This document shows positions 2,965-62,153 of a stretch of 64,000 nucleotides of DNA, one piece after another. The position numbers and the translations under genes are program-made. The first letter of the stretch is position 1, and every line of letters starts with the position of its first letter. The notes under the pieces were generated by a model. It was not told the DNA's origin, did no database searches, and was given only the letters and a program-made list of their open reading frames with translations. Location: IMG/VR virus record IMGVR_UViG_3300012988_000016, positions 186,001-250,000 of that record; one strand, written 5' to 3'.

Positions 2965-3315
2965 TTACCAGTTTCCGTCTCTAACTCGTTGCTGTATCTC
3001 GACCAATTCTTGGTCCGGCAAATCTTTGATCTCGGCCAAAAGTCGAATGAAAAGCTCAGGCCGCTTCATCAACGCCTTCTTGAAGGTAGCCGATACTCTG
3101 CCGGTCATCGCCAATAGGAGGTCCGGACTTGCCCCCAAGTCTTGGGCGATAGCCAACACCACCTTCTCGGAAGGGTCATTGAACCGTCCCAGCTCCAATT
3201 TGGACAGATAGCCTGGGTCCACCCCCACCCGTTGAGCCACTTGCCGTAGCGAAAAGCTAGGATCTGTCGCTCTTTTGGCTTCTCGAAAAGCTTTGATGTA
3301 TTGCCCGAAATCCAC
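2965..3315 (-). CDS. XRE-family HTH transcriptional regulator
   Basis: SLRQVAQRVGVDPGYLSKLELGRFNDPSEKVVLAIAQDL is a cro/C1-type HTH. Confidence 0.88.
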   Translation of the reverse strand: MDFGQYIKAFREAKRATDPSFSLRQVAQRVGVDPGYLSKLELGRFNDPSEKVVLAIAQDLGASPDLLLAMTGRVSATFKKALMKRPELFIRLLAEIKDLPDQELVEIQQRVRDGNW

Positions 3316-15948: not shown

Positions 15949-16797
15949 ATGACCGAAACTATTGAAGACCTCCACCGACCCATGACAGATCCGGCCATCC
16001 AACGGCTGAATCATCTCTACGGGACCGCCCACGAACGAGATCAAGCCCGCTTCATTCTAGGGCTTTTGACCATAATCCGTCTTTCCAACGGAAGCCAACG
16101 TTCTAGGAAAGATTTGACGGCCCCCTACACAAAGACCGGCAAGGAGGGGAAGGCGGTCAAAAAAGAGGCGATGGCCAAGGAATGGCACCGGCAATTCGTC
16201 GACCATTTGATTCAGCAAGGATTCGTCCAGCAAGTCAACCAGTCGAGGAACATCAGCTTCCAAGCGGTCGATCAAAAGGCTCAAAAAGACCTGTTCGACA
16301 TGGTGGAGGATGCGTTGTTTGAGGATGGCCAGCAGCTCAAGAAGCTGTTGTGGCCCTCCGACCATCTGGACCTGACCGAAGCCTTGCAGGAAGAGCATGA
16401 GGCTGAGACCAAGGGGGACGATCCGCCTCCTGTCGATGAGGGGTTGGATGCCGTCAAAGAGGTGGCGAGTCAGCTCAAGTTGGTGGCCGACCATCTGGGG
16501 CAGGTCTATCAAGGATTGACGACCCTGGACAAGCGGTTGGATGAAAAACTCACCGATCTGGAGACCCGATTGGGGCATCTCTCCGGTCTGGAGAAGAGGA
16601 TCGAGACCTCATTCAATCGGATAATTGAGGCAATCGAGAAAGATGAGCGCGTTCAGCTCAGCGTCTTGGCTGACAAGATGATTGAGATCGGTAGCCGTCG
16701 CACCTCCTTGTCCAATCAGCTGGAATCGGAAGGGCGTCGTCTCGACAAGACGTTGGAAGAAATCAAGACCTTGACGGCCAAAACGAGCAAGTCGTGA
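15949..16797 (+). CDS. Hypothetical protein with C-terminal coiled coil
   Basis: 282 aa; heptad-rich C-terminal half; GGTGTA 9 nt upstream. Confidence 0.65.
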   Translation: MTETIEDLHRPMTDPAIQRLNHLYGTAHERDQARFILGLLTIIRLSNGSQRSRKDLTAPYTKTGKEGKAVKKEAMAKEWHRQFVDHLIQQGFVQQVNQSRNISFQAVDQKAQKDLFDMVEDALFEDGQQLKKLLWPSDHLDLTEALQEEHEAETKGDDPPPVDEGLDAVKEVASQLKLVADHLGQVYQGLTTLDKRLDEKLTDLETRLGHLSGLEKRIETSFNRIIEAIEKDERVQLSVLADKMIEIGSRRTSLSNQLESEGRRLDKTLEEIKTLTAKTSKS

Positions 16798-17852
16798 AAA
16801 GAGACAAGACACCTCTTCATACTGAGGAAGCCTACCAGGCGGCTATCTTTGCCGCGCAGGTGGATGCGATCGATCTGATCGAGGAATACAAGAAAAATCC
16901 TCCCAAGACCTCTAGGGATAAAGCTCTGAGCGAAAACGCCATTTGGCTCAAGGTTGACCCCAAATATCGCAACATCATCATGGATATGAAGGGGTACGAG
17001 GCCAAGTGGTTGGCCTATGTGTTGGCCGATGGTGGGCCCTGCAGTCCTTTCAAAGCTCGTGCTCGTGCTCTAAAGGAGCTGCGCAAGGGTTTCAACGTGG
17101 TGCCTGCCTGGGAGGCCCTGGATGAAGGCATCAACCCAGAACATGTGTACGAAGCTTTCACCTCTGCCAGTACAGCCGCCAAAAATGCGGCGGATGGGGA
17201 AGCCCATCAACGATTCGAACAGAGTCTCACTGAGAGTATCGTCAAACCCATTCGAGACAGGAGACCGGTCAGTCCAAAGTCGATTTCACGTCGAGGGGGG
17301 AGAAGTAAGTTGAGTAGACCACCTAGGCAGCGCCCAGCACCTGAACAAACCGAAACTGCGATCGTAGCAGAACCTCCTCGATCCAGATGGGCCAAACCCT
17401 TGGATGAGATGACGACCGAATCCAAGGCATTGTGGGTAACCATCACCATGACGCTGGACAAGGAGATCCCAGCTTTCGTCGCCAGCCGTCTCAATGGTTT
17501 GACTGAACCTAGTCAGATCGAAGACATCTCTGACGAATTCAAGCTTGAGGTCAACGCTTGCTATCAGAATCTATTGGGCAAGATTCGCAATATCCGTGCC
17601 CGTGGGACCTCGAAAGAGATCCTGAATATCAAGCAAAGCGAGATCATTGAAGCGGCGGAGATCCTAGGATTCAAAGCTCCCTCTCGAAGTGCCAAACATT
17701 ACCGAACTTGGCGGCCGGATTTGGAATTGGCCAAAAAGGCCTATCTGAAACTTGCCTCACGCTTTCACCCTGACAAGAACCCCGATGATGATCGAAGCGC
17801 CCAACGCTTCGATTCGATCCAAAAAGCCTGGAACCTGCTGAAGAGTCTCTAA
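16794..17852 (+). CDS. Protein with C-terminal DnaJ (J) domain
   Basis: LELAKKAYLKLASRFHPDKNPDD...QRFDSIQKAWNLL (HPD motif). Confidence 0.85.
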   Translation: MKRDKTPLHTEEAYQAAIFAAQVDAIDLIEEYKKNPPKTSRDKALSENAIWLKVDPKYRNIIMDMKGYEAKWLAYVLADGGPCSPFKARARALKELRKGFNVVPAWEALDEGINPEHVYEAFTSASTAAKNAADGEAHQRFEQSLTESIVKPIRDRRPVSPKSISRRGGRSKLSRPPRQRPAPEQTETAIVAEPPRSRWAKPLDEMTTESKALWVTITMTLDKEIPAFVASRLNGLTEPSQIEDISDEFKLEVNACYQNLLGKIRNIRARGTSKEILNIKQSEIIEAAEILGFKAPSRSAKHYRTWRPDLELAKKAYLKLASRFHPDKNPDDDRSAQRFDSIQKAWNLLKSL

Positions 17853-18404: not shown

Positions 18405-19397
18405 TCAGAACCGCATATCCAGGCCCGCCAATCGGGCCTGTTCCAAAACGCCTTGTTGCTCAGTCGACTCAAGGCGTTTTTGGATCTCGGCTGCCGATTG
18501 GGGGTTGATCTCAATCCCCAAATAGTCCCGTCCCAGCCGCTGTGCCTCCTGAAGAGTCGTCCCACTGCCGGCGAACGGATCCAGAACCAGACAAGGGTCG
18601 ATCTGATCCGTCTCACACTTGCAAGTCATTTGCCAACCCTTGGTCAGATATTCGGGGGGTTGGATGGACGGCATGCTGTATCCCTTGAAGGCGCCGGTCC
18701 CCACACTGCCGTAGCGGGTCGGGTGCCCTTCCCGCTCCGCCACTTCTGACAGGCGTTCCAACTGACGCTCCAGCGGGGCCCCACAGAGGCCACAGCAGCC
18801 TTTCTCGCTGGTGGAGAGGCGGATGCACCGGTTCGGTAGAGCGGTCGGGAATACGGCAACGTGGGCGCCTCCATAGCGTTCAGTCGGTATGTTCCAGCAG
18901 TTCCGCAGATTGGCGTTTGAGTCTTCTCTGACCGCCTCAGAGTCGTAATAGTAGTGCTTTTGCTTGGTCAGCAGGAACAACGGTTCGAATGCTCTGGAGG
19001 GGCGGTCATGCACGTTCTCCGGCATACCGTTTCCCTTGTTCCAGATGATTTCCGACCGAAGGAAGAACCCTATTTGGCGCAACCGGAGGACGAGCCGCCA
19101 GGGTATTCCCAACAGCTCCTTGTTTAGGTAGGTATCGTCGATGTTGAGCCAGAACGAACCGTCGTCCCTCAGGACTCGGTACACTTGTTGGCATATTTCG
19201 ACCATGTGATCCAGATACTGCTCTGAGGTCTTCTCATGGCCCAGCTGACCCTGCCAACCGTCCGGCCATTCAGCTGATGTGGGACCGTAGTCTCTTAGGG
19301 CATAATAGGGCGGGCTGGTGATGCAACAGTGGACGTGTTGATCGGGGAGCTGGTGTAGTTGGTCGAGTGCGGCGCCTAGGAGGATCTGATTTCTCAC
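18405..19397 (-). CDS. Site-specific DNA methyltransferase (N4-C/N6-A, beta class)
   Basis: CCITSPPYY catalytic motif precedes VLDPFAGSGTT (SAM-binding); start moved to GTG 19397, 10 nt after GGTGTA. Confidence 0.9.
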   Translation of the reverse strand: MRNQILLGAALDQLHQLPDQHVHCCITSPPYYALRDYGPTSAEWPDGWQGQLGHEKTSEQYLDHMVEICQQVYRVLRDDGSFWLNIDDTYLNKELLGIPWRLVLRLRQIGFFLRSEIIWNKGNGMPENVHDRPSRAFEPLFLLTKQKHYYYDSEAVREDSNANLRNCWNIPTERYGGAHVAVFPTALPNRCIRLSTSEKGCCGLCGAPLERQLERLSEVAEREGHPTRYGSVGTGAFKGYSMPSIQPPEYLTKGWQMTCKCETDQIDPCLVLDPFAGSGTTLQEAQRLGRDYLGIEINPQSAAEIQKRLESTEQQGVLEQARLAGLDMRF

Positions 19398-19443
19398 TGG
19401 TGGAGGATACACCAAAAATTCTTTTGCAAACTCTCAGATGGTC

Positions 19444-19449
19444 GGTGTA
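19444..19449 (+). promoter_or_regulatory. GGTGTA motif upstream of tracrRNA (putative promoter)
   Basis: Same motif as upstream of more than 30 genes; 12 nt before the anti-repeat; TTGCAA at 19424-19429. Confidence 0.55.
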
Positions 19450-19458
19450 TAGGAACAT

Positions 19459-19560
19459 CACGATCTAAAGGGGTCGCTAACCAGGTCCCCAGCTACCACC
19501 AAATATGCAAAGCTGGGCAAAGGGCCCCTAGGACCAACATCCTAGGGGCCTTTATTTTTC
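19459..19560 (+). ncRNA. tracrRNA
   Basis: 19462-19481 GATCTAAAGGGGTCGCTAAC pairs with repeat nt 1-19 (one U bulge, one G-U, one U-U mismatch); followed by CCCAGCT/AGCTGGG stem and GGCCCCTAGG/CCTAGGGGCC hairpin with T-rich tail; ends approximate. Confidence 0.85.
19521..19560 (+). terminator. Intrinsic terminator-like hairpin at tracrRNA 3' end
   Basis: AGGGCCCCTAGG-ACCAACAT-CCTAGGGGCCTT followed by TATTTTTC. Confidence 0.7.
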
Positions 19561-19572
19561 CAGGACATAGAC

Positions 19573-22500
19573 ATGACACTTACATTGGGTCTAGATATCG
19601 GTACCAACTCGATTGGGCACGCACTTGTTGAGACGGATGAACAGGGGAACGTCATCTCCCTGAAACACATTGGAGTCCGAATCTTCAGTGACAGTCGAAC
19701 CGATAAAGAGAAGAAGCCTCTCAACGAGGCCAGGCGAACGGCTAGACAAGCGAGACGACAACGCGAACGCAAGAAGTCGAGGATGAAAGCCGTCTTGCGA
19801 GTATTGCGAGAACACGGGCTAGACCCTCAAGATTCCCTTCTGGAGAGCCCTTACGCAGCCAGGGCCGCCGCCCTCACAGGGCCGCTCAGCAGGTCTCAGG
19901 TAGGGAGGGCTATCTGGCATATTGCCAAACACAGAGGCCCTCGACTGGTGCGAAAAGATGACAAGGAGCAAGGTGTCATCAAAGAAGGCATCCGCAGTCT
20001 CGAAACCGAGATGCTGGCACAGAAGGCTCGGACCTATGGTGAACTTCTTGAAAGAATCCGGCTGAATGGTGGGTCTGTACGTCTCCGAGCTAACAGTGAG
20101 GGCTCATACAATCGTTACCCGTCCAGACAGGTGATGGAGGCTGAGTTCAACCATCTGTGGGAATCTCAAGTACCGCACCATCCAGAGGTTATGACCGAGG
20201 CTCTTAGAGAGCGCCTCATAACGGCCATCTTCTATCAGCGTCCTTTGAAGCCAGTCTATCCAGGGCGATGTACGCTGGAACCAGATGAATATCGGATGCC
20301 AAAGGCGATGCCAATGGCCCATGAGTTCAGGATCCGATCGGAGGTGGCCAATCTGACCCTCAAACAGGGAGATGAGGTCCGAACCCTAACGGCCAATGAG
20401 CGTCAAATCGTAGTTGATGGTTTGTTGAACTCAGAGAAGCTGACCTTTACCGCTATCGCCAAACTGCTGGGATTTCGTGCCGGCGTGAAGTTCAATCTCG
20501 AAGGAGATGACGGTGATGGGGGCAAGGCCAGGAATTACTTGATCGGAGATCTGACTTCCAGCAAGATTCGTAGTGTGTGGCCCAATTTCTCTAAAATGCC
20601 GGAGAACATGAGACTTAGCTTGATCCTAGCATTGCTTGACATTGACGATGAGCTAGAACTCAAATGTAAGCTTCGATCCGATTTTGGGATTTCACCAGAG
20701 GTGGTGGATCAGTTGTCTAGTTTGATGCTGCCAGCCGGATACATCAATCTCAGCCAAAAAGCTGTGAGGGCCGTCTTGCCTTATCTTCAACAAGGTATGG
20801 GCTACGCACAAGCCTGTGCAGCTGCTGGATACCATCATTCCGATCATCGTCCAGAGGAATTGACCCCAATCCTACCCTTCTACAACGAACTCCCAGGAAT
20901 GAAGCGTTATCTGGGGCAGGAACAAAAGGGTAAACCTGGAAGGATCTCTAATCCAACAGTCCATGTGGCTTTGAATCAGGTTCGCAAGGTTTACAATACG
21001 TTGGTTGAGGTCTTTGGGGTGCCTGATTGTGTCAATATCGAGGTCACTCGTGAATTGAAACAGACGGCCAAGCAGAAGATCGCGGCCAATAAGCAGAATG
21101 CGGCCAACAAGAAGGTTCGTGACGCCTTCAAAGAGAAGTTCCCCGAGCGTGCCAACTCCGACCAAGACCTGGTACGTTGGAGGTTGTGGAATGAACTTCC
21201 AGAGGAGCGCAAGGTCTGTGTCTACTCTGGAAAAGAGATTACTCTTAACGACCTTTTCTCACCTAGGGTTGAAATTGACCACATTATCCCCCACTCGATC
21301 TCTTTCGACAACAGCCCGTCTAATCTGGTGCTTTGTGCTCAAGGGGCTAACCGTCTGAAGACCAATAAGACTCCTCATGAAGCCTTCGCCCCTGGCCTAC
21401 ACAAGGAGTTCAACTGGTCAGCCATTGAGCAACGAGTGTTTGAACTGGCAGCTGACAAATGCGGCACCTGGGCTAAAAAGAAGCTTCGCTTCAAGCCAGA
21501 TTATCTAGATGTAGGAGGGGATTTCGCCACCAGGCAATTGAACGACACGGCTTACTTGTCAAAAGTTGTCCGTATCTACCTAGGACACTCCTGTCCAAAG
21601 GTGTTAGCCGTACGGGGTGCCGTTACGGCCATCTGCCGCAAAGAATGGGGCCTCGACCGATTGTTACGAGACACAGTTTCCGATCATGCCGATCTGTTCT
21701 GCCTATCCTCGGTCAAGAGCACGGGGGTGTTTATGGCCCCTCATCATGTGACAGGAGGGTCGCACGACATTCGGGAAGATTGCTCGGTCAATAAGCTGCT
21801 CAAATTTGGAGCTGAAGTAGTACGTGTAGATCCTATCGGGAGGTTCCAAACGCCAGGTGAGATTCGCAGGATCGAGCCAAGAGGTCCAAAGGTTAACTTC
21901 CAAAATCTTAGAACCACAACTAGGAAGCCGTTGACTAGCCTTACGGCGAACAGTATCTCACAGATCAAAGATGATGGGTTGAGAACCAAAATCACAGCCC
22001 ATATCAAAGAGGTCAATCCCAAGCTCCTTACCGACACTCTGAATCGAGAGGCTAAGGTAGAATTGTCCAGGCTGTTGGGAGAGTTTGGCCAGAAGCACTC
22101 CGTTGGAAGGGTCCGGATTGTCGCCAACAAATCTGGAGTCATCGTTCGACACGGAGCCGCTAACCAACACACAAAGGTGTTGATAGCAGATACGAATCAT
22201 CATGGAGATGTGGTGGTAAGAGACGGTAAAGTGAAGATGCTCCTGACCACGTATGCAGAACTCAACCATCCACCAGAAGTGGAAGCTGGATGGACGCTAA
22301 AGATGCGACTGCACAAGGGCGACATGATTCGTGTGCCAGGATACGTCTACAACAAATACCCAAAGAAGCCGAATTATGGGAAGGACAGATCTGACCACCG
22401 GCATCATGCGGTGGATGCTTTCGTGATAGCTTGCATCACACCAAGTCTGTTGCGCAAGATCAGTCGTTCCATCGCCTTGTCCAAGTACAACCAGTTGCAC

Positions 22501-22635
22501 GAGTTCCCAGAGCCGTACGAGAGGTTCAAGCAAGAACTGAAGACACATTTGAGGAAACTCGTTGTGTCCAATAAATTGGACCATAGCATCAGCGCCCCCA
22601 TTTTCACCGAAACGAACTACGGCTTCACAGCCTGA
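19573..22635 (+). CDS. cas9: Type II-C Cas9, 1020 aa, with rearranged C-terminal domain order
   Basis: RuvC-I LGLDIGTNSIG (D8), Arg-rich bridge helix, REC, RuvC-II NIEVTRE (E490), HNH EIDHIIP...N (H570), RQLNDTAY, RuvC-III DHRHHAVDA (H945/D948); flanked by tracrRNA and array. Confidence 0.97.
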   Translation: MTLTLGLDIGTNSIGHALVETDEQGNVISLKHIGVRIFSDSRTDKEKKPLNEARRTARQARRQRERKKSRMKAVLRVLREHGLDPQDSLLESPYAARAAALTGPLSRSQVGRAIWHIAKHRGPRLVRKDDKEQGVIKEGIRSLETEMLAQKARTYGELLERIRLNGGSVRLRANSEGSYNRYPSRQVMEAEFNHLWESQVPHHPEVMTEALRERLITAIFYQRPLKPVYPGRCTLEPDEYRMPKAMPMAHEFRIRSEVANLTLKQGDEVRTLTANERQIVVDGLLNSEKLTFTAIAKLLGFRAGVKFNLEGDDGDGGKARNYLIGDLTSSKIRSVWPNFSKMPENMRLSLILALLDIDDELELKCKLRSDFGISPEVVDQLSSLMLPAGYINLSQKAVRAVLPYLQQGMGYAQACAAAGYHHSDHRPEELTPILPFYNELPGMKRYLGQEQKGKPGRISNPTVHVALNQVRKVYNTLVEVFGVPDCVNIEVTRELKQTAKQKIAANKQNAANKKVRDAFKEKFPERANSDQDLVRWRLWNELPEERKVCVYSGKEITLNDLFSPRVEIDHIIPHSISFDNSPSNLVLCAQGANRLKTNKTPHEAFAPGLHKEFNWSAIEQRVFELAADKCGTWAKKKLRFKPDYLDVGGDFATRQLNDTAYLSKVVRIYLGHSCPKVLAVRGAVTAICRKEWGLDRLLRDTVSDHADLFCLSSVKSTGVFMAPHHVTGGSHDIREDCSVNKLLKFGAEVVRVDPIGRFQTPGEIRRIEPRGPKVNFQNLRTTTRKPLTSLTANSISQIKDDGLRTKITAHIKEVNPKLLTDTLNREAKVELSRLLGEFGQKHSVGRVRIVANKSGVIVRHGAANQHTKVLIADTNHHGDVVVRDGKVKMLLTTYAELNHPPEVEAGWTLKMRLHKGDMIRVPGYVYNKYPKKPNYGKDRSDHRHHAVDAFVIACITPSLLRKISRSIALSKYNQLHEFPEPYERFKQELKTHLRKLVVSNKLDHSISAPIFTETNYGFTA

Positions 22636-22700
22636 TTTGCGAGAGCCTCTATCGAGAGAGGCCTCATCTGCTCTTTGACAACCGAACCGCTCGCAAACCG

Positions 22701-22735
22701 TCGTGCAAGTACTCAATATTAATGTGCTTGCACGA
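22701..22735. repeat. Inverted repeat in CRISPR leader
   Basis: TCGTGCAAGTAC-N11-GTGCTTGCACGA, ending 5 nt before repeat 1. Confidence 0.75.
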
Positions 22736-22740
22736 ATAGG

Positions 22741-23717
22741 GTTGTGACCCCTTTTGATCTCTCGATCCATTCTCCCGTCTTGGCCATCCCCAATCTCACC
22801 GCCGGATCCGCGTTGTGACCCCTTTTGATCTCTCGATCCATTCTCCCACCCAGGCAACCAGTTTGTCCGCGCACCCCTAGAATGTTGTGACCCCTTTTGA
22901 TCTCTCGATCCATTCTCCCAGTCAGGCCAATGTCTCATACTACCTAAAGAGAGCTGTTGTGACCCCTTTTGATCTCTCGATCCATTCTCCCGGTGAAAGG
23001 ATGATGTCAGAATGACTTGGTCAATGTGTTGTGACCCCTTTTGATCTCTCGATCCATTCTCCCAGCCAACAGCTTCGCTGCACAGATGCAGTTTGATGCG
23101 TTGTGACCCCTTTTGATCTCTCGATCCATTCTCCCCGAGCCAACTGACGTCAGCGAACCACGCCCCCTGGTAGTTGTGACCCCTTTTGATCTCTCGATCC
23201 ATTCTCCCTCGACGCCCGAGATCGTCACCAAGTACACGCACACGTTGTGACCCCTTTTGATCTCTCGATCCATTCTCCCTACGTGCCGAGACGCTGTTCG
23301 ACTGTTACAAGGAGGTTGTGACCCCTTTTGATCTTCCCGATCCATTCTCACTACGCTGCTCAAGTAAGAAGGCGTTTCCGATCTGTTATGACCCCCTTTA
23401 TCTTCTAACCCATTCCACCACCCCTCTTGGTGCTGGTGTCTCCGCGTGAAGTTGTGACCCCTTATCGTCTTGTCCTTTCACACCAACTCGTCGCCAACAC
23501 GAAGTTGTGACCCCCTTCTGATCTTCTGATCCTTTCTCACAACAAGAGAACCGTTACTCAACACGGAACATAAGGTTGTGACCCCTTTTAGATCCCTTCG
23601 AGACATTCTCCTCTATCGTAAACACCTCGGCGTTGTAACCCCTTTTGATCGTCTGATCCTTTCTCACGTTGTGAGATCAACTACAACGAGCTCGCCAAGT
23701 GTTGTGACCCCTTTTGA
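22741..23717 (+). CRISPR. CRISPR array: 36-nt repeat GTTGTGACCCCTTTTGATCTCTCGATCCATTCTCCC, 8 identical plus 7 degenerate copies
   Basis: Identical repeats start at 22741, 22812, 22884, 22956, 23028, 23100, 23173 and 23244; degenerate ones at 23315, 23385, 23451, 23504, 23575, 23632 and 23701; first 8 spacers 35-37 nt; orientation taken from tracr pairing and trailer decay. Confidence 0.97.
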
Positions 23718-23803
23718 GTACGTCGAGTGACCTGAAACGTCAACGATACGAAGGCCGAGCTCCTCAGGGGGTTCGGCCTTTGCCGTTTGGTGTATCGATC
23801 CCC

Positions 23804-24421
23804 ATGCCTCCGCCCGACCCTCCTGCTTCAAGCCTACAGATAGACCTGAATGGCCTGATCACACCCTTCGGCGGGGGGCTGACCGGTCTCCCGCCTGGAG
23901 AGTTGTGGAACCTGTCGGGCGTCGGTAGTTTGGTCTATTCGGGGGAGTTCACCCAGCAGGTGTTCGATAGAATGATCGCCAGATGTGTTGGTGGGGTCAG
24001 GCCTGCCTTTGCGATCATGAATCGAACCGCCTACAACGAGTGTGTGATGAATGGCGGGTGTCAGAACACCATCACTCCGATGCCCTCAATCGAAGGCACC
24101 CACACTACTTCAGTCAGCTACGCGGGGATCCGTCTCTATGTCAACAATGAGACGTCCAATGTATCGATATTGCTGAGCAGTGACTTTGTTCAGCTGAGTA
24201 TCGCCCAAAGGATCGACCCGCCCTTCACCTCTGTCCCGATCACTGGATTCACCCGTTTACAATTGGAGTGGATGATACCATCCGGGGCTAGAGACGGCTT
24301 CGATGATAGTGTAGCGTTCCTCCATTCTCCTCAGGATTTCACCAAAATCATGTCTGAGCCGGTCCGACAGAGCAGGCTACAGATCCTGCGTGACGGTGAT
24401 GGGTTGAAAGCACAGGAATGA
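23804..24421 (+). CDS. Hypothetical protein with shared C-terminal motif
   Basis: Start moved to ATG 23804 (9 nt after GGTGTA 23789-23794); ends VRQSRLQILRDGDGLKAQE. Confidence 0.7.
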   Translation: MPPPDPPASSLQIDLNGLITPFGGGLTGLPPGELWNLSGVGSLVYSGEFTQQVFDRMIARCVGGVRPAFAIMNRTAYNECVMNGGCQNTITPMPSIEGTHTTSVSYAGIRLYVNNETSNVSILLSSDFVQLSIAQRIDPPFTSVPITGFTRLQLEWMIPSGARDGFDDSVAFLHSPQDFTKIMSEPVRQSRLQILRDGDGLKAQE

Positions 24422-24424
24422 CGT

Positions 24425-24955
24425 ATGCCCCCTTCTAGACCCACCATATCTCTAGCGGCAGATCGAGACGGCAACCTACTGATCACATCTATCAAGTACT
24501 TGAGAGAAGAACATCTGTGGCATTTGGGCGGCTTCACCCGACAAGTGTTGGAACAGCTGATCGATCGTAGCATCGATATCCCAGCATTTGTTTGGATCAC
24601 TCCAGAAGCATACAACGAATTAGCCAGTGATTCGGGGACGAATCCAAGCACTTACCGAGGTATGCCTATCCATGTCAACAGTGCGATAGATGAAGACAAC
24701 GTTACCGCCGTGTTGATGTCGACAGCCTACTGTCCGTTGGCTGTCGCCCACAGAAGAGATCCCCCACCTATTAGGCAATTCAATTTTCTCAGATCCAGTC
24801 TAGAGTTGGGGAGACCGCCATCGGTTCAAGAGGATTTGTTGAACCTACAAGCAGAAGCGACGCACTCGGAAGCGGTTGTCAAGCAAGCATTTGCTGAAGT
24901 GGTGCGTCAGAGCCGTCTACAGATCTTGCGTGATGGGGACGGTCTGGATGGCTAA
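24425..24955 (+). CDS. Hypothetical protein with shared C-terminal motif
   Basis: Ends VRQSRLQILRDGDGLDG. Confidence 0.7.
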   Translation: MPPSRPTISLAADRDGNLLITSIKYLREEHLWHLGGFTRQVLEQLIDRSIDIPAFVWITPEAYNELASDSGTNPSTYRGMPIHVNSAIDEDNVTAVLMSTAYCPLAVAHRRDPPPIRQFNFLRSSLELGRPPSVQEDLLNLQAEATHSEAVVKQAFAEVVRQSRLQILRDGDGLDG

Positions 24956-26129: not shown

Positions 26130-27158
26130 ATGAAACGCTTCCTCCTTGCATTGATTCTAGCTGCACTGTCATGCAGCACCTCTAACCCTAGTTTGGTGGT
26201 CCAGCCCAATGGTGTGGGTGGGGTGGGCGGAACTCTCAACACTACAGCTGGCTCGGCGGGCTTGTGGACCCTAGCTCAGGCAGGTCTGATGCTAAATGTG
26301 TCAGATGGTGGGCAAGCAGGTCAAGACGCCGGCACTAAGCCGATCGAGATCATCACTGAGTTGCCAGACGGATTCACCTCTACCGAGATAGGGGGATACC
26401 GGTTGGGAGATCCGTTGGATGTGGGACAGTCGGGCGCCCCTTCCTTGCCCGATGACGACTGTGCCAATGTGATCACTGGTGTGTCGAGAGACTTCCGTTC
26501 CGATCGTCCAAACAACCACCCAGACTTTGAAGTGTTCGCCGGTAAGACGGTCTCTAGTGGGATGGTGGCACCCAACCTGGGGGACGACCAGAAGCCGGTC
26601 TATACGGGTGTGTGCGAGGTAGGGGCTCAGCCTACATGTCTGAATGGTCCGCAGACCACCAGCCAAGCCAACTTTGACCAATGGTACCGATCTGCCAACG
26701 GCTTGAACCAGCCCTACTTGGTGCGGATCTGGCTCGCCCCTCAACCATCCGGCCTGTTCAGCTTCGAAAGCTTGTTCTACTACCCCCTAGATGGGGCAGG
26801 GTTCAAAGACACCGGCCTGGCGGATGACCAGAAGCAGCACAACTTTGGCTTCACGACCGAGATCCACACACAGTTCCTCTACAAGGGTGGCGAAGTGTTC
26901 CAGTTCAAGGGGGACGACGATGTGTGGATCTTCATCAACCAGAAGCTTGCGGTCGATCTGGGCGGTTTGCACCACGCTCAAGCGGCCACCATCAGGCTGG
27001 ATGATGCGGCCCCTCAGCTGAGGATCGAGACAGGTAAGGTGTACAGCTTAGACCTGTTCCACGCCGAACGACACACCAATCAGTCGACTTTCCGCATCGA
27101 TTCGAACCTGTCGTTCGTCAATTGTGGGACGGTCGTTCCTGAACCCCCACCCAGGTGA
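26130..27158 (+). CDS. Fibro-slime family (PA14-domain) lipoprotein
   Basis: Lipobox-like LAALSC; RDF...HPDFE, NFDQWYR, HNFGFTTEIHTQF and FKGDDDVWIFINQKLAVDLGGLH. Confidence 0.88.
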   Translation: MKRFLLALILAALSCSTSNPSLVVQPNGVGGVGGTLNTTAGSAGLWTLAQAGLMLNVSDGGQAGQDAGTKPIEIITELPDGFTSTEIGGYRLGDPLDVGQSGAPSLPDDDCANVITGVSRDFRSDRPNNHPDFEVFAGKTVSSGMVAPNLGDDQKPVYTGVCEVGAQPTCLNGPQTTSQANFDQWYRSANGLNQPYLVRIWLAPQPSGLFSFESLFYYPLDGAGFKDTGLADDQKQHNFGFTTEIHTQFLYKGGEVFQFKGDDDVWIFINQKLAVDLGGLHHAQAATIRLDDAAPQLRIETGKVYSLDLFHAERHTNQSTFRIDSNLSFVNCGTVVPEPPPR

Positions 27159-29595: not shown

Positions 29596-30369
29596 TCACG
29601 GCAGGTATGACAGCCCATATTGGACCCGACGGGACCTCAGGACCGAGAAATCGACCGGCTTGTCTTCTTTCTCCAGATACCTTTTGGTGATGAGAAAGTC
29701 TGCCAATGAACGGTCAATTTGACTCTTTGACATCCCATTGAAGTATGGGATGATGGCTTGCAGGAGATGGGTTGGCAGGAAGGAATCTCCTTCGAATCGG
29801 TCAGTGATGTGCTTTAGATAGGCGGCCGCATCTTCCTTCTGAGAGTCGCGTTCATCCAACACATCCATACGATCTCGCAGGCGTGGGGGAAGCTGCGGTA
29901 GCTCTGACAAGCCGATGAAGATCATCTGGAAACACTGTTTGTCGTTCCAGTCCCTGAGGTCCAGAAGTTTGCTGGTCAGCAGTTGGATCTTCGGATCGGC
30001 AAGCAACATATCGCCATTGGGGATGACCAGAAAGCACACGTCTTGACCAAGATCTCTGGTCAAAAAGCGCTCCAACACCTGAGACAATTCAACCGTGCGA
30101 AGGACGTTATGTTGACGATCTTCAGAGAGAGATTCTTTGTAGACCCCTCTCTTGCCCAGTTCTGCCGATTCCCTCAAATATTCGGCTGTCGTCAACTCCC
30201 CAAGATAGACTGAAGCCATCAACGGGTGTTCGCAAAATACCCTGAAGGGGTTGTTACTCATCTTGAGGGTCTCATCCAGATGCTTGACCAACGCCACTTC
30301 GTCGAAAACCCTCACATAGGAGGCAGGGTTGAGGGTTCGGATCACATGTTTGAGTTTTTCGTATGCCAT
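29596..30369 (-). CDS. Possible inactive AAA+ (Ycf46 N-terminal-like) domain protein
   Basis: YVRVFDE..., CFLVIPNGDMLLADP and MIFIG...LPPRL..MDVLD pattern; no Walker A. Confidence 0.4.
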   Translation of the reverse strand: MAYEKLKHVIRTLNPASYVRVFDEVALVKHLDETLKMSNNPFRVFCEHPLMASVYLGELTTAEYLRESAELGKRGVYKESLSEDRQHNVLRTVELSQVLERFLTRDLGQDVCFLVIPNGDMLLADPKIQLLTSKLLDLRDWNDKQCFQMIFIGLSELPQLPPRLRDRMDVLDERDSQKEDAAAYLKHITDRFEGDSFLPTHLLQAIIPYFNGMSKSQIDRSLADFLITKRYLEKEDKPVDFSVLRSRRVQYGLSYLP

Positions 30370-48123: not shown

Positions 48124-49116
48124 TCAGAATGCTGAGCTCTGGATTACCCAGAAATCGCTAGCCAGTTTGGTGTTTTTGAGATAATCGTAACTCACCCAGT
48201 AGTAGCCAGCCAAGCCCCAAGCTGATCCCCAGCTGTTACGAACCAAGAATGCGCCCTTGGAAGCTGAATTGAACGGGTTAACCATTTGGTCGTCATACCC
48301 GACCAAGCATTGAGCGTGACCGCCCTGCAGAGTTTCTGACTTGCCTGGGATGTTCAGGAAGCCGTTCTTGGCCATATCAGCCGACATGAAGTAGCTGTAG
48401 ACCTGGAAGCCGTAGCCAACCAAATAGCCGGCAGCTAGTGTGGCTTTCATGGTCGCCAAGTCACCATCTGCGATCGAATGATACGATGTGACCTTGTGCG
48501 TCAGAGCTGTGGTCCACAAGGCAGCTGGCGGGTTGGTGGCGAACTTCGAGATATTGTACGGCCATGAGGCTTCATCCACCACACCGTATTGAGCCGCAGC
48601 TTTGACGGTATCGCGGATGGTAGCTCCGGAATCCTCAGAGACGGTCCCCTCGATCTTCCGCGTGGCGTAGTACTCAAACAACCGGCTTACTTGCACCAAC
48701 TTGGCTGGCGTCGGAGTTGGGGAGGGTGATGGGGTTGGAGCTGGAGTGGGAGCTGAGGTGGTCTTGATGGTAGTGGTGAAGGTAATGGTGCCATCAGCCG
48801 CTACTGAGACGTTCGAAACACTGACATTGGCTGTGGCGGCACCCAACTGAGCCAACGAAGTTTTGGCCAACCCACGGTTCTCATTGGCTTCCACCATACC
48901 AGCCAACATGTTGGCCGTACAGCTGCCTAGGTCGCCCTGATCTTCAACTGGACTACAGATGGAACGCAAGTCTACCGAGGCGGGAGCGGCACCAAACACT
49001 CCTGAGGGTAGTTTGAGGCGATAGTCTTCATCTCGGGTGTCGGTAGGCTGTTTCTTCCAACCACCTAGGTGAACCTGGCGTGGCGAACCATTCGCATGAT
49101 GAGCTGTCTTGAGCAT
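48124..49116 (-). CDS. C1 (papain) family cysteine peptidase
   Basis: VDLR...VEDQGDLGSCTAN (Gln/Cys), GGHAQCLVGYDD (His) and VRNSWG (Asn). Confidence 0.92.
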   Translation of the reverse strand: MLKTAHHANGSPRQVHLGGWKKQPTDTRDEDYRLKLPSGVFGAAPASVDLRSICSPVEDQGDLGSCTANMLAGMVEANENRGLAKTSLAQLGAATANVSVSNVSVAADGTITFTTTIKTTSAPTPAPTPSPSPTPTPAKLVQVSRLFEYYATRKIEGTVSEDSGATIRDTVKAAAQYGVVDEASWPYNISKFATNPPAALWTTALTHKVTSYHSIADGDLATMKATLAAGYLVGYGFQVYSYFMSADMAKNGFLNIPGKSETLQGGHAQCLVGYDDQMVNPFNSASKGAFLVRNSWGSAWGLAGYYWVSYDYLKNTKLASDFWVIQSSAF

Positions 49117-55163: not shown

Positions 55164-56138
55164 TCAAACTGTTATCTCCAACCCCTCATAGGCGGCCAGG
55201 GTTTCGATCCCACAGAGGTCTTGCACCTGTTGAGCGATGATCCGGATCTGAAAATCGTCCGCCTCTGGATCGTGATGAGTGGTCACCACCTTCTTGGGCT
55301 TGGCCTCGGCCGCCACTTCAGAGATGTACTCAGGGAATGAATGCCCCCAACCATATTTGGCGGGTCCGTTCTTCTTCCCCTGATAGGTGTGTAGATCGTA
55401 TTGACAATCGGTGATCCACACGTCAACTCCCTGCACCAACTCAAGTAATCCAACAGGAGTGCCGCCGCGGTAAGGTTCATGGTCGGTCGTAAAGGCGATG
55501 CTTTGCCCCTGATGTTCGATCCGGTAGCCAAACGTGTCTTGAGGGTGAAACAGTTTTCTAGCCATCACCGTGACGCCAGGATCGGCCAGATCCTTAGAGT
55601 CGTTGAAAATACGTATCCAGCCATCATAGACGCTATTGGAAGTCATATGCATGGCTATCTGTTGAAGTTCTTCCAGATTTACTGGAGAAACTGGGGGATT
55701 CATTTGACCTCGGTATACCCGATCCAGCTCGCTGTCCCAGCTCTTGCCACCAAAGAACTGAAAGTCACATTGAAAACGCTTCCGAGGCAAGTATAGGGGC
55801 TTCCAGAAGGGCATACCTTGGATGTGATCCCAATGGACGTGAGATTGGAGGATCGTTCCTTTGAGGGTTTTTGTTACCATCAGCTGTTTCATCTGATGAT
55901 TGCCCAGCTCTCTGAGGCCGGTCCCCATGTCGAGGATGAATAGCTGTCCACCTGCCTGAACCTCCACACAGGTGGTGTTACCTCCGTAGGTGCTCGATTC
56001 TTCAAAAGACAGCATATCGAAGCTGTCACCACGCTCAGCTGCCTCAAAGGCCCGTCTGACCTTGTCGCTAACCTGAGCGGGGGTCAACGGAGTGGGGACC
56101 GAACCTCGGACGCCCCAGAATTTGGTATTGATGGTCAT
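55164..56138 (-). CDS. MBL-fold metallo-hydrolase (RNase Z/phosphodiesterase-like)
   Basis: FWGVRGSVPTP, YGGNTTCVEV, SHVHWDHIQG, TDHE and HHDP. Confidence 0.88.
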   Translation of the reverse strand: MTINTKFWGVRGSVPTPLTPAQVSDKVRRAFEAAERGDSFDMLSFEESSTYGGNTTCVEVQAGGQLFILDMGTGLRELGNHQMKQLMVTKTLKGTILQSHVHWDHIQGMPFWKPLYLPRKRFQCDFQFFGGKSWDSELDRVYRGQMNPPVSPVNLEELQQIAMHMTSNSVYDGWIRIFNDSKDLADPGVTVMARKLFHPQDTFGYRIEHQGQSIAFTTDHEPYRGGTPVGLLELVQGVDVWITDCQYDLHTYQGKKNGPAKYGWGHSFPEYISEVAAEAKPKKVVTTHHDPEADDFQIRIIAQQVQDLCGIETLAAYEGLEITV

Positions 56139-60312: not shown

Positions 60313-61257
60313 TCAAAAACGGGCTATACCAGCCTCATAGTAGATAGGCTGGAGCTCTGCCCCAAAGGCTCGACGGCCTAGCCGTTTGGCAGCCAGCGAG
60401 CCACTGAACAGGCCGCCAAAGGGTTCCCACACCACATCCCCTGGGTCAGATGAAGCTTCGATCAGGCGACTCATCAGGTCGAGGGGCTTCTGATTGGGAT
60501 GCAGCATTTTGGTCCCCACCTTGACCCTCTCATGCCCATTGACTGGACCTCGGTTCCAACAATTGGTCACCCCATGAGGGCAGTTGAACTTAGCTCTCAT
60601 CAGTTTCCACTCAGATGGGGTGACGGGATGCTGACCATCAAGTGAGAAATAGGGACGTCCCTCGGGTCTACCATGTTGATTGGCATGATTGACCATCAGT
60701 TGCATCGCCTGCACTGGGGGAAAGTACCAGAGTCGTCCTTGATTGAGGTACTTTCGAGTAGCCGCATCCTTGACCCCACAAGCCTCGTTGGCTGATTTGA
60801 GGGTCAGTCCAGTACGCCTCCATTCCCGCAGCAACCACTGTTTGAGCGTGGAACAGGCAACCTTTGGCTCAAACACGTACTGACAACATATCTCGGTCAC
60901 GACAGGGAAGCGGCGTATTTTCTTCGTATCTACGTTGCCTGCAATGTGCTGAAGTCCCTTGTTCCACACATTGAGGTTTTGATACCGCCAGCCATATCGC
61001 TCCAACAATGGGTGAGCGGACGCCCACCCTATCTCGGTATTCCAGAACCAGAGGGTAGTTTGGGGCAAGGCTAGCTCCGACCAAAGCCTCACATGAGGCT
61101 CATACCAAGGCGGTATGCTGAGATGATCGGAGGTGTCTCCTTCGAAGCCCAATAGACCGTACGCCCCATCTGAGATGATGACGGTTGGCTTGGGCCAATC
61201 TCTGTAGAACTGCAGACTGTCCCCAAGATAAAGGGAGGCTTGCCCCTCAAGCATCAT
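60313..61257 (-). CDS. DNA methyltransferase (N4/N6, beta class) with atypical catalytic motif
   Basis: IISDGAYG in place of DPPY; HPNQKPLDLM and VWEPFGGLFSG. Confidence 0.8.
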   Translation of the reverse strand: MMLEGQASLYLGDSLQFYRDWPKPTVIISDGAYGLLGFEGDTSDHLSIPPWYEPHVRLWSELALPQTTLWFWNTEIGWASAHPLLERYGWRYQNLNVWNKGLQHIAGNVDTKKIRRFPVVTEICCQYVFEPKVACSTLKQWLLREWRRTGLTLKSANEACGVKDAATRKYLNQGRLWYFPPVQAMQLMVNHANQHGRPEGRPYFSLDGQHPVTPSEWKLMRAKFNCPHGVTNCWNRGPVNGHERVKVGTKMLHPNQKPLDLMSRLIEASSDPGDVVWEPFGGLFSGSLAAKRLGRRAFGAELQPIYYEAGIARF

Positions 61258-62153
61258 GGGGATGGTTGGTAGACCGTAAAATTGTTCACGAAGGAGCTCT
61301 TCTTAGGGTCCAACACATCATCCAACAACATGGTGAAATCCCCATTCTTGGTACGATTCCCATTGTTGATGAACCCACCTCTAATCCCAGAAGTGAACAT
61401 CCATCGATGCTCGGCAGGGATCATTCGATCCAGCTTATCCCCTATACCGGCACCCAGTCTCAGTTGTTCGGCTCGCTTGGAACCAAAAATCAACGTATGG
61501 TCACGACGAACCAAATTATCCAATCGAGGCGGGCGTCCGTCATGAGCGTCGATCGCAGGAGCGAACAATGTGTTTTCAAAGCCGGCCCTAGGACGGTACC
61601 ACCAGAATATCGGATCGGTGCTTTCACCCCGCATATCCTGCATATCAAAGCAACAAATGGCGATTGGCCATTCTGGATATAGACGCCCCAATTCGTCCAA
61701 GAAAGCCTCAGGGATATGGGGGCGTTTGTTGGACGGAACTTCTTTCAACGCTAGATTCAAACCAGCCGCTGAATTGGACAGCGCTACCGTATAGGCACCG
61801 GAGTCAATGATCTCGAAGGCTACTGCACCCAACACATCTTCGTCATCGTCTTCACTCAAAGAGAAGCTTCTGGAAAAGCTTTTCTGCTTGGGTTTAAGAT
61901 GCTCGATCGCTTGATGGTATTCAGACAAGATGTCTTTGAAGCCGCTCGCATCCACCACATTAGCCGGACCCAATGAACCCAGGGCAGGGATGGGTAGGAT
62001 CATGGCATTCGGGCCTCGCCTGTAGGCCGTCACACTATTTTGATAACCCAGGACGTGGACTGTCTCAACCCCATCTTCTGTGGGATGATCCACTTCAGCT
62101 GAATAGATGACGGTGTTGGAAAGCTCAGTACCAGATTCGATGACACAACACAT
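61254..62153 (-). CDS. Conserved hypothetical protein
   Basis: 299 aa; YQN...NAMILPIP, SGAYTVALS and APAIDAHDG. Confidence 0.65.
   Translation of the reverse strand: MCCVIESGTELSNTVIYSAEVDHPTEDGVETVHVLGYQNSVTAYRRGPNAMILPIPALGSLGPANVVDASGFKDILSEYHQAIEHLKPKQKSFSRSFSLSEDDDEDVLGAVAFEIIDSGAYTVALSNSAAGLNLALKEVPSNKRPHIPEAFLDELGRLYPEWPIAICCFDMQDMRGESTDPIFWWYRPRAGFENTLFAPAIDAHDGRPPRLDNLVRRDHTLIFGSKRAEQLRLGAGIGDKLDRMIPAEHRWMFTSGIRGGFINNGNRTKNGDFTMLLDDVLDPKKSSFVNNFTVYQPSP

What the first reader, a model, noticed from the sequence alone, without database searches (positions are those of the whole stretch)
19444..23717. Minimal phage-type CRISPR-Cas9 locus with no adaptation genes
Seen: tracrRNA, cas9 and array lie between a DNA methyltransferase gene and small hypothetical genes, with no cas1, cas2, csn2 or cas4 anywhere in the 64 kb. 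The tracrRNA is preceded by the same GGTGTA motif used by the element's other genes, so the locus looks integrated into its transcription programme. Established: phage-borne CRISPR systems often lack Cas1/2 and target competing elements or host genes; type II is uncommon among them. Inference: an interference-only module for inter-phage competition or host manipulation.
Basis: partly seen in the sequence, partly recalled or inferred. Interest (0 to 1): 0.72.

Follow-up and report, generated by a model that had tools for sequence, protein, structure and literature searches.

The report
Huge-phage CRISPR-Cas9 with rearranged Cas9
A giant soil phage carries a complete tracrRNA-cas9-array unit but no spacer-acquisition genes, at least one spacer matches another phage from the same soil, and its Cas9 has its last three sequence blocks in an order seen in only one other known Cas9.

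Summary
The locus is all on the + strand:
- a tracrRNA (about 19460-19559);
- a 1020-aa cas9 (19573-22635);
- an array of 9 repeats and 8 spacers (22741-23351);
- a tail of decayed repeats running to 23717.

The window lies in a 308,895-bp IMG/VR phage record estimated about 65% complete. It has a major head protein, a head protease and tail genes. Its head protein is 83% identical to that of a 485-kb uncultured phage. Cas1, Cas2 and Cas4 are absent from the whole contig.

Spacer S6 matches 35 of 37 bases in a contractile-tail phage module from soil metagenomes. S7 matches a second contig. Both protospacers have GGG on the 3' side.

GGTGTA is a real signal. 85 of its 200 genome copies lie 8-11 nt before an ATG.

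Adaptation-less Cas9 loci in huge phages were reported in 2020, so the finding as given is a new member of a known kind.

The Cas9 block order is unexpected. The RuvC-III segment is at the extreme C-terminus and the normal C-terminal end follows HNH. Only one other protein, 36% identical and also phage-borne, shares this order. All catalytic motifs are kept.

The parts
18405..19392 (-). N6/N4 DNA methyltransferase gene. The likely start is GTG at 19392, 10 nt after a GGTGTA copy on the - strand (19408-19413).
   Evidence: PF01555 E=4.2e-43 and phrog_67 E=8e-65. Motif position.
19444..19449 (+). GGTGTA gene-start signal in front of the tracrRNA.
   Evidence: In 85 of 200 genome copies an ATG follows after 8-11 nt. 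Here A19460 follows after 10 nt, two bases before the anti-repeat.
19460..19559 (+). tracrRNA. The 5' end is inferred. Anti-repeat 19462-19482, hairpin 19488-19517, terminator stem 19520-19553 plus T-run.
   Evidence: Duplex with repeat positions 1-19. Terminator scan. Fold -43.9 kcal/mol, z=-3.7. No Rfam match.
19573..22635 (+). cas9, 1020 aa, type II-C-like with a rearranged C-terminal third. Block A is aa 1-699 (RuvC-I, bridge helix, REC, RuvC-II, HNH). Block D is aa 700-765 (the normal C-terminal end). Block C is about aa 784-921 (first part of the WED/PAM-interacting region). Block B is aa 937-1020 (RuvC-III).
22636..22740 (+). Leader between cas9 and the first repeat. No sigma-70-type promoter was detected and there is no GGTGTA copy.
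22741..23351 (+). CRISPR array: 9 repeats of 36 nt (the ninth has a 1-nt insertion) and 8 spacers of 35-37 nt. Spacers: S1 22777-22811, S2 22848-22883, S3 22920-22955, S4 22992-23027, S5 23064-23099, S6 23136-23172, S7 23209-23243, S8 23280-23314.
   Evidence: S6 and S7 have protospacers in soil metagenome contigs.
23352..23717 (+). Decayed trailer of the array. Degenerate repeats lie at about 23384, 23451, 23504, 23575 and 23632, with a truncated repeat at 23701-23717. The units between them are irregular, 18-35 nt.
23789..24421 (+). Next gene, with no family match. A GGTGTA copy at 23789-23794 lies 9 nt before ATG 23804, which marks the downstream edge of the locus.

Best explanation
This is an adaptation-less type II CRISPR-Cas9 unit (II-C-like) carried by a huge tailed soil phage.

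Shown:
- tracrRNA, cas9 and the array lie head to tail on one strand, in the non-structural half of the genome.
- The Cas9 keeps all nuclease motifs.
- Two spacers match foreign contigs from the same soils, and both protospacers have GGG on the 3' side.

Inferred mechanism:
- Transcription begins just after the phage's own GGTGTA signal. This gives a tracrRNA that starts at about 19460.
- Read-through of the tracrRNA terminator gives the cas9 message and the pre-crRNA.
- The tracrRNA pairs with the first 19 nt of each repeat. Host RNase III and Cas9 then mature the guides.
- Cas9 cuts competing phage DNA, or resident prophage DNA, next to a GGG-type PAM during co-infection.
- No new spacers are added by the phage. 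The array is inherited and is decaying at its far end.

The Cas9 belongs to a small clade found only on phage-like contigs without cas1 or cas2. In this protein and in one relative, the RuvC-III segment has moved to the C-terminus and the usual C-terminal end of the PAM-interacting region sits directly after HNH. I infer that the relocated segment still folds back to complete the RuvC active site.
For: Locus anatomy.

Viral identity.

Absence of cas1, cas2 and cas4 in 309 kb.

Targets:
- S6 matches L022:3158-3194 at 35 of 37 bases, with 3' flank GGGAATG. It lies in a 392-aa ORF next to tape-measure, sheath and baseplate genes.
- S7 matches a 1239-bp contig of run X3 with one mismatch and 3' flank GGGTTGG.
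- No spacer matches the phage's own contig.

Catalytic residues are conserved in alignments: D8, E490, H570, N593, and the DHRHHAVDA motif at aa 941-949.

The rearrangement is real:
- It is a single open frame.
- A second assembler's 215-kb contig matches 19400-22740 with no differences.
- Short contigs from two other samples span the C-to-B junction with no differences.
- P0121 comes from an unrelated assembly. It is 36% identical and colinear over aa 5-1018.
- hhalign places the normal C-terminal end at aa 714-765 (probability 95.8%, E=7.8e-9).

Folding back of RuvC-III:
- The complex prediction of aa 1-699 with aa 922-1020 scored ipSAE 0.77, against a best control of 0.00.
- That mark was reached by 58 of 80 solved complexes and by 2 of 110 mismatched pairs.
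- The interface includes residues 4-8, 488-490 and 941-960.

Phage-specific clade: the query and P0121 are sisters (SH-aLRT 97). With P0002 and P0228 they form a four-member group (99). All four lie on hypothetical-rich contigs without cas1 or cas2.

GGTGTA signal.
Against: - The genome is about 65% complete, so cas1 and cas2 could lie in the missing third.
- No RNA data exist. The tracrRNA ends, crRNA processing and read-through are all inferred.
- Only two protospacers were found, so the PAM is tentative. The first G is ambiguous because every repeat also starts with G.
- The S6 target has two mismatches in the PAM-proximal third, at spacer positions 28 and 35. This copy might therefore escape cleavage.
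- The full-length AlphaFold model has pLDDT below 50 for blocks D and B. The alignment it was given was misaligned there, so there is no confident whole-protein model.
- The docking score may reflect memory of solved Cas9 structures.
- The repeat:anti-repeat duplex is short, at 19 bp.
Confidence: 0.7

Rival explanations
1. The unit serves host manipulation rather than phage-versus-phage competition. In this reading it cuts or silences resident prophages, tailocins or host genes, to prevent their induction or to free resources.
For: The S6 target is an 8-kb contractile-tail module. It could equally be a prophage or a tailocin cluster in a bacterial chromosome. It is not in IMG/VR. Al-Shayeb et al. 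2020 report phage spacers that target host genes.
Against: The sheath's nearest relatives are true phages: Thermus phage Riverbug, Meiothermus phages MMP7 and MMP17, and Myxococcus phage Mx4. No spacer target in a bacterial core gene was found. The other six spacers have no known target.
Confidence: 0.2
2. The locus is a decaying, non-functional remnant. The scrambled Cas9 is inactive, and the array is a fossil carried along by the phage.
For: There is no adaptation module. The distal half of the array is decayed. The Cas9 block order is abnormal. The closest sequenced relative, LR745208.1, lacks the locus altogether.
Against: The 1020-aa frame is intact and all catalytic motifs are kept. Eight repeats are identical. 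The anti-repeat and terminator are intact. The same block order is kept in a relative at only 36% identity, which implies long purifying selection. Spacers match co-occurring DNA with a consistent GGG flank.
Confidence: 0.12
3. The unusual Cas9 order is an assembly or chimera artefact.
For: The sequence comes from a metagenome. The best-holding run may be the sample the window was assembled from.
Against: Logan's independent assembly reproduces 19400-22740 without a difference. Contigs from two other samples and studies cross the C-to-B junction. P0121, from a different ENA assembly, has the same order at 36% identity. Three in-frame junctions arising by chance are very unlikely.
Confidence: 0.03
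4. The contig is a bacterial chromosome fragment or a megaplasmid, not a phage.
For: No large terminase was detected with PF03237. Most genes have no family match.
Against: It has a major head protein (E=3.9e-51), a head maturation protease, a baseplate hub and tail proteins. The head protein is 82.6% identical to that of a 485-kb uncultured phage, 46.7% to Tunturiibacter phage Tunturi_5 and 37.6% to Bacillus phage G. IMG/VR classes the record as viral. There are no tRNA genes in the window. No rRNA or housekeeping genes turned up in the stretches and proteins that were scanned.
Confidence: 0.05

Closest known systems
CRISPR-Cas systems of huge phages (Al-Shayeb et al., Nature 2020, PMC7162821), which include Cas9-based type II
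   Same: A phage of more than 200 kb carries an effector and an array but lacks Cas1, Cas2 and Cas4. The catalytic residues are kept and spacers are aimed at other phages.
   Different: This Cas9 has no close relative in GenBank phage records: the best match is a fragment at 26% identity. It also has a rearranged block order, which that paper does not describe in the passages read.
Type II-C Cas9 such as Nme1Cas9 (PDB 6JDQ, 6JDV, 6KC8), with ThermoCas9 and GeoCas9
   Same: These are the best sequence and fold matches (E=1e-61; TM 0.60-0.62). The size is similar (about 1020-1080 aa), repeats are 36 nt, and a tracrRNA lies next to cas9. Residues 1-697 are colinear.
   Different: There is no cas1 or cas2. 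Spacers are 35-37 nt, against 30 nt in the closest bacterial locus. RuvC-III is at the C-terminus, not after HNH. The candidate PAM is GGG, adjacent to the protospacer. No -10-like element was evident in the repeat by eye (not scanned formally), unlike the internal repeat promoters I recall for Neisseria.
Engineered circularly permuted Cas9 (Oakes et al., Cell 2019; recalled from memory, not read here)
   Same: It shows that Cas9 tolerates new termini and re-ordered connectivity while it stays active.
   Different: Those are artificial, true circular permutants of SpCas9. Here the change is natural and is not a simple circular permutation: the order is A-D-C-B in place of A-B-C-D.
Vibrio phage ICP1 type I-F CRISPR-Cas (Seed et al. 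2013; cited in PMC7162821)
   Same: A phage-borne CRISPR system used against a competing or antagonistic genetic element.
   Different: As PMC7162821 contrasts it, ICP1 has its own spacer-acquisition machinery; from memory it is a class 1 system that targets a host island.

Membership tests
Type II CRISPR-Cas | Single effector Cas9 with RuvC-like and HNH nuclease domains | tested here: met
   TIGR01865 E=4.5e-156; HNH_4, RuvC_III and Cas9_a. D8, E490, H570, N593 and the HHAxDA motif are conserved.
Type II CRISPR-Cas | tracrRNA with an anti-repeat complementary to the CRISPR repeat, followed by 3' hairpins | tested here: met
   19462-19482 pairs with repeat positions 1-19. A hairpin and a terminator follow. 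Expression was not tested.
Type II CRISPR-Cas | CRISPR array of regular repeats and unique spacers | tested here: met
   9 repeats and 8 unique spacers.
Subtype II-C (complete locus) | cas1 and cas2 adjacent to cas9, with no csn2 and no cas4 | tested here: not met
   No Cas1 or Cas2 anywhere in 308,895 bp. Cas4 is absent. Csn2 is absent, but that search had no positive control.
Subtype II-C (Cas9 lineage) | The Cas9 groups with II-C Cas9 proteins by sequence and fold | tested here: met
   The nearest homologues are proteobacterial II-C Cas9s. The closest bacterial homologue checked lies beside cas1 and cas2. Nme1Cas9 is the best solved relative.
Canonical Cas9 architecture | Order RuvC-I, bridge helix, REC, RuvC-II, HNH, RuvC-III, WED, PAM-interacting domain | tested here: not met
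   RuvC-III is at aa 937-1020. The normal C-terminal end is at aa 714-765. Of the 285 retrieved homologues, 282 were classed as canonical order directly, P0191 after inspection, one could not be classed, and only P0121 shares the query's order.
Huge-phage adaptation-less CRISPR systems | Located on a phage genome of more than 200 kb with virion genes | tested here: met
   The contig is 308,895 bp with head, protease, baseplate and tail genes. Relatives of 309-497 kb are known.
Huge-phage adaptation-less CRISPR systems | Spacers match other phages or the host | tested here: met
   S6 matches a contractile-tail phage module in L022. S7 matches a second contig. The other six spacers have no known target.
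Active RNA-guided nuclease | Guide-dependent DNA cleavage next to a PAM | not testable with these tools
   Only indirect support is available: conserved motifs, the in-silico docking of RuvC-III, and a shared GGG flank at two protospacers.

The most novel reading that the evidence does not exclude
A phage-specific Cas9 lineage has undergone a natural, non-cyclic swap of sequence blocks. RuvC-III has moved to the extreme C-terminus and the last part of the PAM-interacting region has moved to just after HNH. The protein remains an active RNA-guided nuclease. It is expressed from a phage-specific GGTGTA signal that starts transcripts about 10 nt downstream, which would make the tracrRNA and many leaderless mRNAs.
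Probability: 0.45. Interest if true: 0.8.

Novelty: new variant of a known kind. Interest (0 to 1): 0.62.

Why it matters
The locus adds a soil example to the known class of interference-only CRISPR systems in huge phages. It comes with a direct spacer-to-target link inside the same metagenomes and with a candidate PAM.

The larger point is the Cas9 itself. Two proteins only 36% identical keep the same unusual block order. This implies that Cas9 can work with its RuvC domain completed by a segment from the far C-terminus.

If confirmed, this would:
- give natural break and rejoin points for engineering split, permuted or domain-inserted Cas9s;
- define a distinct architectural variant for classification;
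- raise the question of whether the change helps the phage enzyme avoid inhibitors or host regulators aimed at ordinary Cas9.

The start-codon-coupled GGTGTA signal is a separate, testable lead on how this phage group expresses its non-structural genes.

Tried and rejected
Searches that found nothing:
- Rfam has no match for the tracrRNA.
- The array has no match in GenBank phages or in PLSDB plasmids.
- A single-protein search of IMG/VR for relatives found none.
- The flanks of the S6 and S7 targets, and 22-mers of S1, S2 and S8, are absent from IMG/VR.
- The repeat 19-mer gives only six single matches in reference genomes, about the number expected by chance. It gives no arrays, and nothing in IMG/VR.
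- The Terminase_6N profile found nothing.
- DNA of the flanking regions has no match in GenBank phages. LR745208.1 has no homologue of Cas9 or of two neighbouring genes.
- The word-based search restricted to aa 700-1020 missed P0121 and found no further protein with the same order.
- Literature searches found no report of a naturally rearranged Cas9. This is absence of evidence only.

Structure attempts that did not resolve the rearranged part:
- The full-length AlphaFold2 model has pLDDT below 50 for aa 695-777 and 916-1020. MAFFT had aligned the homologues' blocks to the wrong query blocks.
- A fragment-wise alignment meant to fix this was scattered by MAFFT and was not used.

Readings considered and rejected:
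- S7 also targeting L022: only 20 of 35 bases match, which is chance level.
- GGTGTA as a Shine-Dalgarno site: by my reading of the conserved 16S 3' end (from memory, not a tool result) it would pair over GGUG only. The tracrRNA copy is followed by no start codon, and structural genes use AGGA-type sites instead. This reading is not fully excluded.
- The 314-aa ORF on the - strand at 22297-23241: spurious, because it overlaps the array.


Full report
WHAT IS THERE

The window is bases 186001-250000 of a single 308,895-bp IMG/VR virus record. The record is linear, has 52.8% GC, and CheckV estimates it to be about 65% complete.

- ORF 19573-22635 encodes 1020 aa. It matches the Cas9 equivalog TIGR01865 at E=4.5e-156, and Pfam HNH_4, RuvC_III and Cas9_a.
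- Eight identical 36-nt repeats start at 22741. A ninth at 23315 has one inserted base. Together they frame eight unique spacers of 35-37 nt.
- About six increasingly degenerate repeats follow, ending in a truncated repeat at 23701-23717.
- Bases 19462-19482 are complementary to the first 19 nt of the repeat, with one mismatch and one bulge. A hairpin and a 14-bp terminator with a T-run follow.
- The 107-nt stretch folds better than all 200 shuffles, z=-3.7. Rfam has no model that matches it.
- Because the decayed repeats lie on the far side, the cas9-proximal end is the leader end.

CONTEXT AND ABSENCE OF ADAPTATION GENES

The upstream gene is an N6/N4 DNA methyltransferase on the opposite strand. 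The downstream genes have no family match.

The contig is a tailed phage.
- It has a major head protein (phrog_2522, E=3.9e-51), a head maturation protease, a baseplate hub and tail proteins.
- The head protein is 82.6% identical to that of the 485,034-bp uncultured phage LR745208.1. This size fits the completeness estimate.
- It is 46.7% identical to that of Tunturiibacter phage Tunturi_5 and 37.6% to that of Bacillus phage G.

Adaptation genes were not found.
- Cas1, Cas2 and Cas4 profiles find nothing in the 309 kb, while the same searches succeed in control genomes.
- The Csn2 search was empty but had no working control.
- As a further control, tblastn with Cas1 and Cas2 from a bacterial relative finds Cas1 next to Cas9 in seven of twelve IMG/VR Cas9 loci, and Cas2 in five of those. 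It finds nothing in this genome or in the three related phage-like contigs.
- No second array exists on the contig.
- The repeat occurs in no array among 185,579 reference genomes or in IMG/VR.

TARGETS

No spacer matches the phage's own contig, GenBank phages or plasmids.

Laying the contigs of three soil metagenome runs on the locus gave two foreign matches.
- A 7.1-kb contig of run X1 matches S6 with two mismatches.
- A 1.2-kb contig of run X3 matches S7 with one mismatch.

The S6 target was recovered from JGI metagenomes as L022 (8087 bp, 59% GC).
- The protospacer is at 3158-3194 and is 35 of 37 identical, with mismatches at spacer positions 28 and 35. The 3' flank is GGGAATG.
- It lies in a 392-aa ORF beside tape-measure, sheath and baseplate genes.
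- The sheath resembles those of Thermus, Meiothermus and Myxococcus myoviruses.
- One of the two differences changes an amino acid (P20A) and the other is silent.

The S7 target has the 3' flank GGGTTGG. Both protospacers therefore carry GGG on the PAM side. The repeat itself begins GTT, so the array is not a target. The first G is ambiguous, because every repeat also begins with G. Two sites make only a tentative PAM.

THE GGTGTA SIGNAL

- It is the most enriched hexamer in the 100 nt upstream of genes: 71 genes against 12.4 expected.
- It is tied to start codons. 85 of the 200 copies in the genome lie 8-11 nt before an ATG.
- It is confined to the non-structural part of the genome. There are 3 copies in the first 100 kb and 81 in the rest.
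- Structural genes such as the head gene use an AGGA-type ribosome-binding site.

Three copies frame the locus.
- One lies 10 nt before the GTG of the methyltransferase.
- One lies at 19444-19449 before the tracrRNA.
- One lies 9 nt before ATG 23804 of the next gene.

After the tracrRNA copy there is no start codon. Ten bases on is A19460, two bases before the anti-repeat.

The simplest reading is a class-specific promoter element that starts transcripts about 10 nt downstream. This would make many mRNAs leaderless and would give the tracrRNA its 5' end. That is inference. A translation signal is not excluded.

cas9 has no GGTGTA of its own. It has an AGGA 8 nt before its ATG and starts 13 nt after the T-run. 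I therefore infer that cas9 and the array are expressed by read-through.

The same GGTGTA-N10-ATG precedes cas9 in L023. Seven of 14 copies in L030 are start-coupled.

THE CAS9 IS REARRANGED

Residues 1-697 are colinear with type II-C Cas9s. Nme1Cas9 matches at E=1e-61 and the best homologues are 33-38% identical. The rest of the protein is not colinear.
- The RuvC-III segment runs from DHRHHAVDA to ETNYG. In homologues it follows HNH at about residue 710-830. Here it is at aa 937-1020, and the protein ends at the point where homologues continue into the next domain.
- Residues 784-921 match the homologues' residues of about 800-940.
- Residues 700-765 match the homologues' last 60-80 residues. 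BLAST against P0002 gives E=9e-8. hhalign against a profile of 30 C-terminal ends gives probability 95.8%, E=7.8e-9.
- The order is therefore A-D-C-B in place of A-B-C-D. This is not a simple circular permutation, and I have no mechanism for it.

Rarity:
- Of the 285 retrieved homologues, 282 were classed directly as having the ordinary order. P0191, first flagged as rearranged, proved ordinary on inspection. One could not be classed, and only P0121 shares the query's order.
- I searched aa 690-1020 against 1.84 billion representative proteins. Apart from the query's own record, only one protein, P0121, matched in one colinear stretch reaching its C-terminus.
- P0121 (1085 aa) is 36% identical and colinear over aa 5-1018.

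It is not an artefact.
- It is one open frame.
- A second assembler's 215-kb contig matches 19400-22740 without a difference.
- Contigs from two other samples cross the C-to-B junction.
- P0121 comes from another assembly.

Evidence that the enzyme may still work:
- D8, E490, H570, N593 and the HHAxDA motif are all kept.
- A complex prediction of aa 1-699 with aa 922-1020 places the motif segment (941-960) against residues 4-8 and 488-490. It scored ipSAE 0.77 against a best control of 0.00. That mark was reached by 58 of 80 solved complexes and by 2 of 110 mismatched pairs.
- This result may draw on memory of solved Cas9s. It shows likeness, not activity.
- The full-length AlphaFold2 model is confident for blocks A and C, and its best fold match is Nme1Cas9 (TM 0.60-0.62). 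It is uninformative for blocks D and B because the alignment was misplaced there.

A PHAGE-ASSOCIATED CLADE

On a tree of the N-terminal 700 residues of 102 Cas9s, the query and P0121 are sisters (SH-aLRT 97). With P0002 and P0228 they form a clade of four (99). All four sit on contigs full of small unannotated genes, with no cas1 or cas2.
- L023 (P0121) has an array, then a tracrRNA, then cas9. It also carries an endolysin-like M15 peptidase.
- L019 and L020 (P0002) have 14 repeats with 36-nt spacers upstream of cas9, together with SNF2, DnaB and primase genes.
- L030 (P0228) has a two-repeat array.

L019 and L023 share other genes with this phage at 40-67% amino-acid identity. P0002 and P0228 have the ordinary order, so the rearrangement arose within the clade.

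Repeat periods of 67-74 nt, which imply spacers of roughly 31-38 nt, occur here, in L019 and in L023. The closest bacterial locus, which has cas1 and cas2, uses 30-nt spacers.

The closest sequenced relative of the whole phage, LR745208.1, has no Cas9 and no homologue of two neighbouring genes. The locus therefore lies in a variable region.

COMPARISON WITH WHAT IS KNOWN

Al-Shayeb et al. (2020) already reported Cas9-based type II systems in huge phages.

The locus meets the defining features of type II: Cas9, a tracrRNA and an array. Its Cas9 is of II-C descent. It fails the II-C locus definition because cas1 and cas2 are missing, and it fails the canonical Cas9 domain order.

I found no report of a natural Cas9 with this order in the searchable literature. 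That is not proof of novelty.

VERDICT

The added value is the rearranged Cas9, which is conserved in a second phage, and the start-coupled GGTGTA signal. Both are testable.

I rate the whole as a new variant of a known kind, with interest 0.62.

Noticed in passing
whole genome G000:C1; in the window e.g. 8776, 15949, 27177, 29596-30369(-), 55164-56138(-), 61254-62153(-): GGTGTA followed after 8-11 nt by ATG accounts for 85 of the 200 copies of the hexamer. Only 3 such copies lie in the first 100 kb (structural genes) and 81 lie in the remaining 209 kb. It may mark leaderless transcripts of one gene class, or it may be an unusual translation signal.
   Followed up: partly
window 19573-19950: The public record's own gene call for Cas9 (P0001, 895 aa) starts at residue 126. 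It therefore omits the RuvC-I motif and the bridge helix, which are conserved from the first ATG at 19573.
   Followed up: yes
window 22740-23244: The Logan contig of run X1 joins the first repeat directly to the eighth, skipping 503 bases. This is most likely an assembler collapse of the 36-nt repeats, but shorter array variants in the population are not excluded.
   Followed up: no
L023:595-635: In the relative that carries P0121, a lone degenerate repeat remnant sits between the tracrRNA terminator and the GGTGTA-N10-ATG of cas9.
   Followed up: no
L019:236-1708: A TnpB-like gene (OrfB_IS605 with a Cas12f1-like TNB domain) lies about 7 kb from the Cas9 locus on the related phage-like contig. 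In L019 the Cas9 locus and several other genes sit between two genes whose homologues are adjacent in this phage (G000:C1:95077-97947). The locus therefore occupies different places in related genomes.
   Followed up: partly
G000:C1:7282-8229 (L002): A LAGLIDADG/HNH homing-endonuclease-like gene lies directly downstream of the major head protein gene.
   Followed up: no
window 24354-24402 and 24894-24942: A 49-nt direct repeat at 78% identity links two neighbouring genes downstream of the array. This suggests a tandem pair of paralogues of unknown function.
   Followed up: no
window 16794-17852 and 26130-27158: A 352-aa protein with a C-terminal DnaJ domain lies upstream of the locus. A 342-aa protein with a PA14 domain lies downstream of it.
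   Followed up: no
L022:3158-3194: Both mismatches between spacer S6 and its target lie in the PAM-proximal third, at spacer positions 28 and 35. One of them changes an amino acid (P20A). This would fit an escape variant co-existing with the phage (depth 7 against 24 in run X1).
   Followed up: partly
window 48704-48761: A 12-nt tandem repeat, 4.8 copies with unit GCTGGGGTGGGA, lies inside a 330-aa ORF that has a C-terminal peptidase-like match.
   Followed up: no
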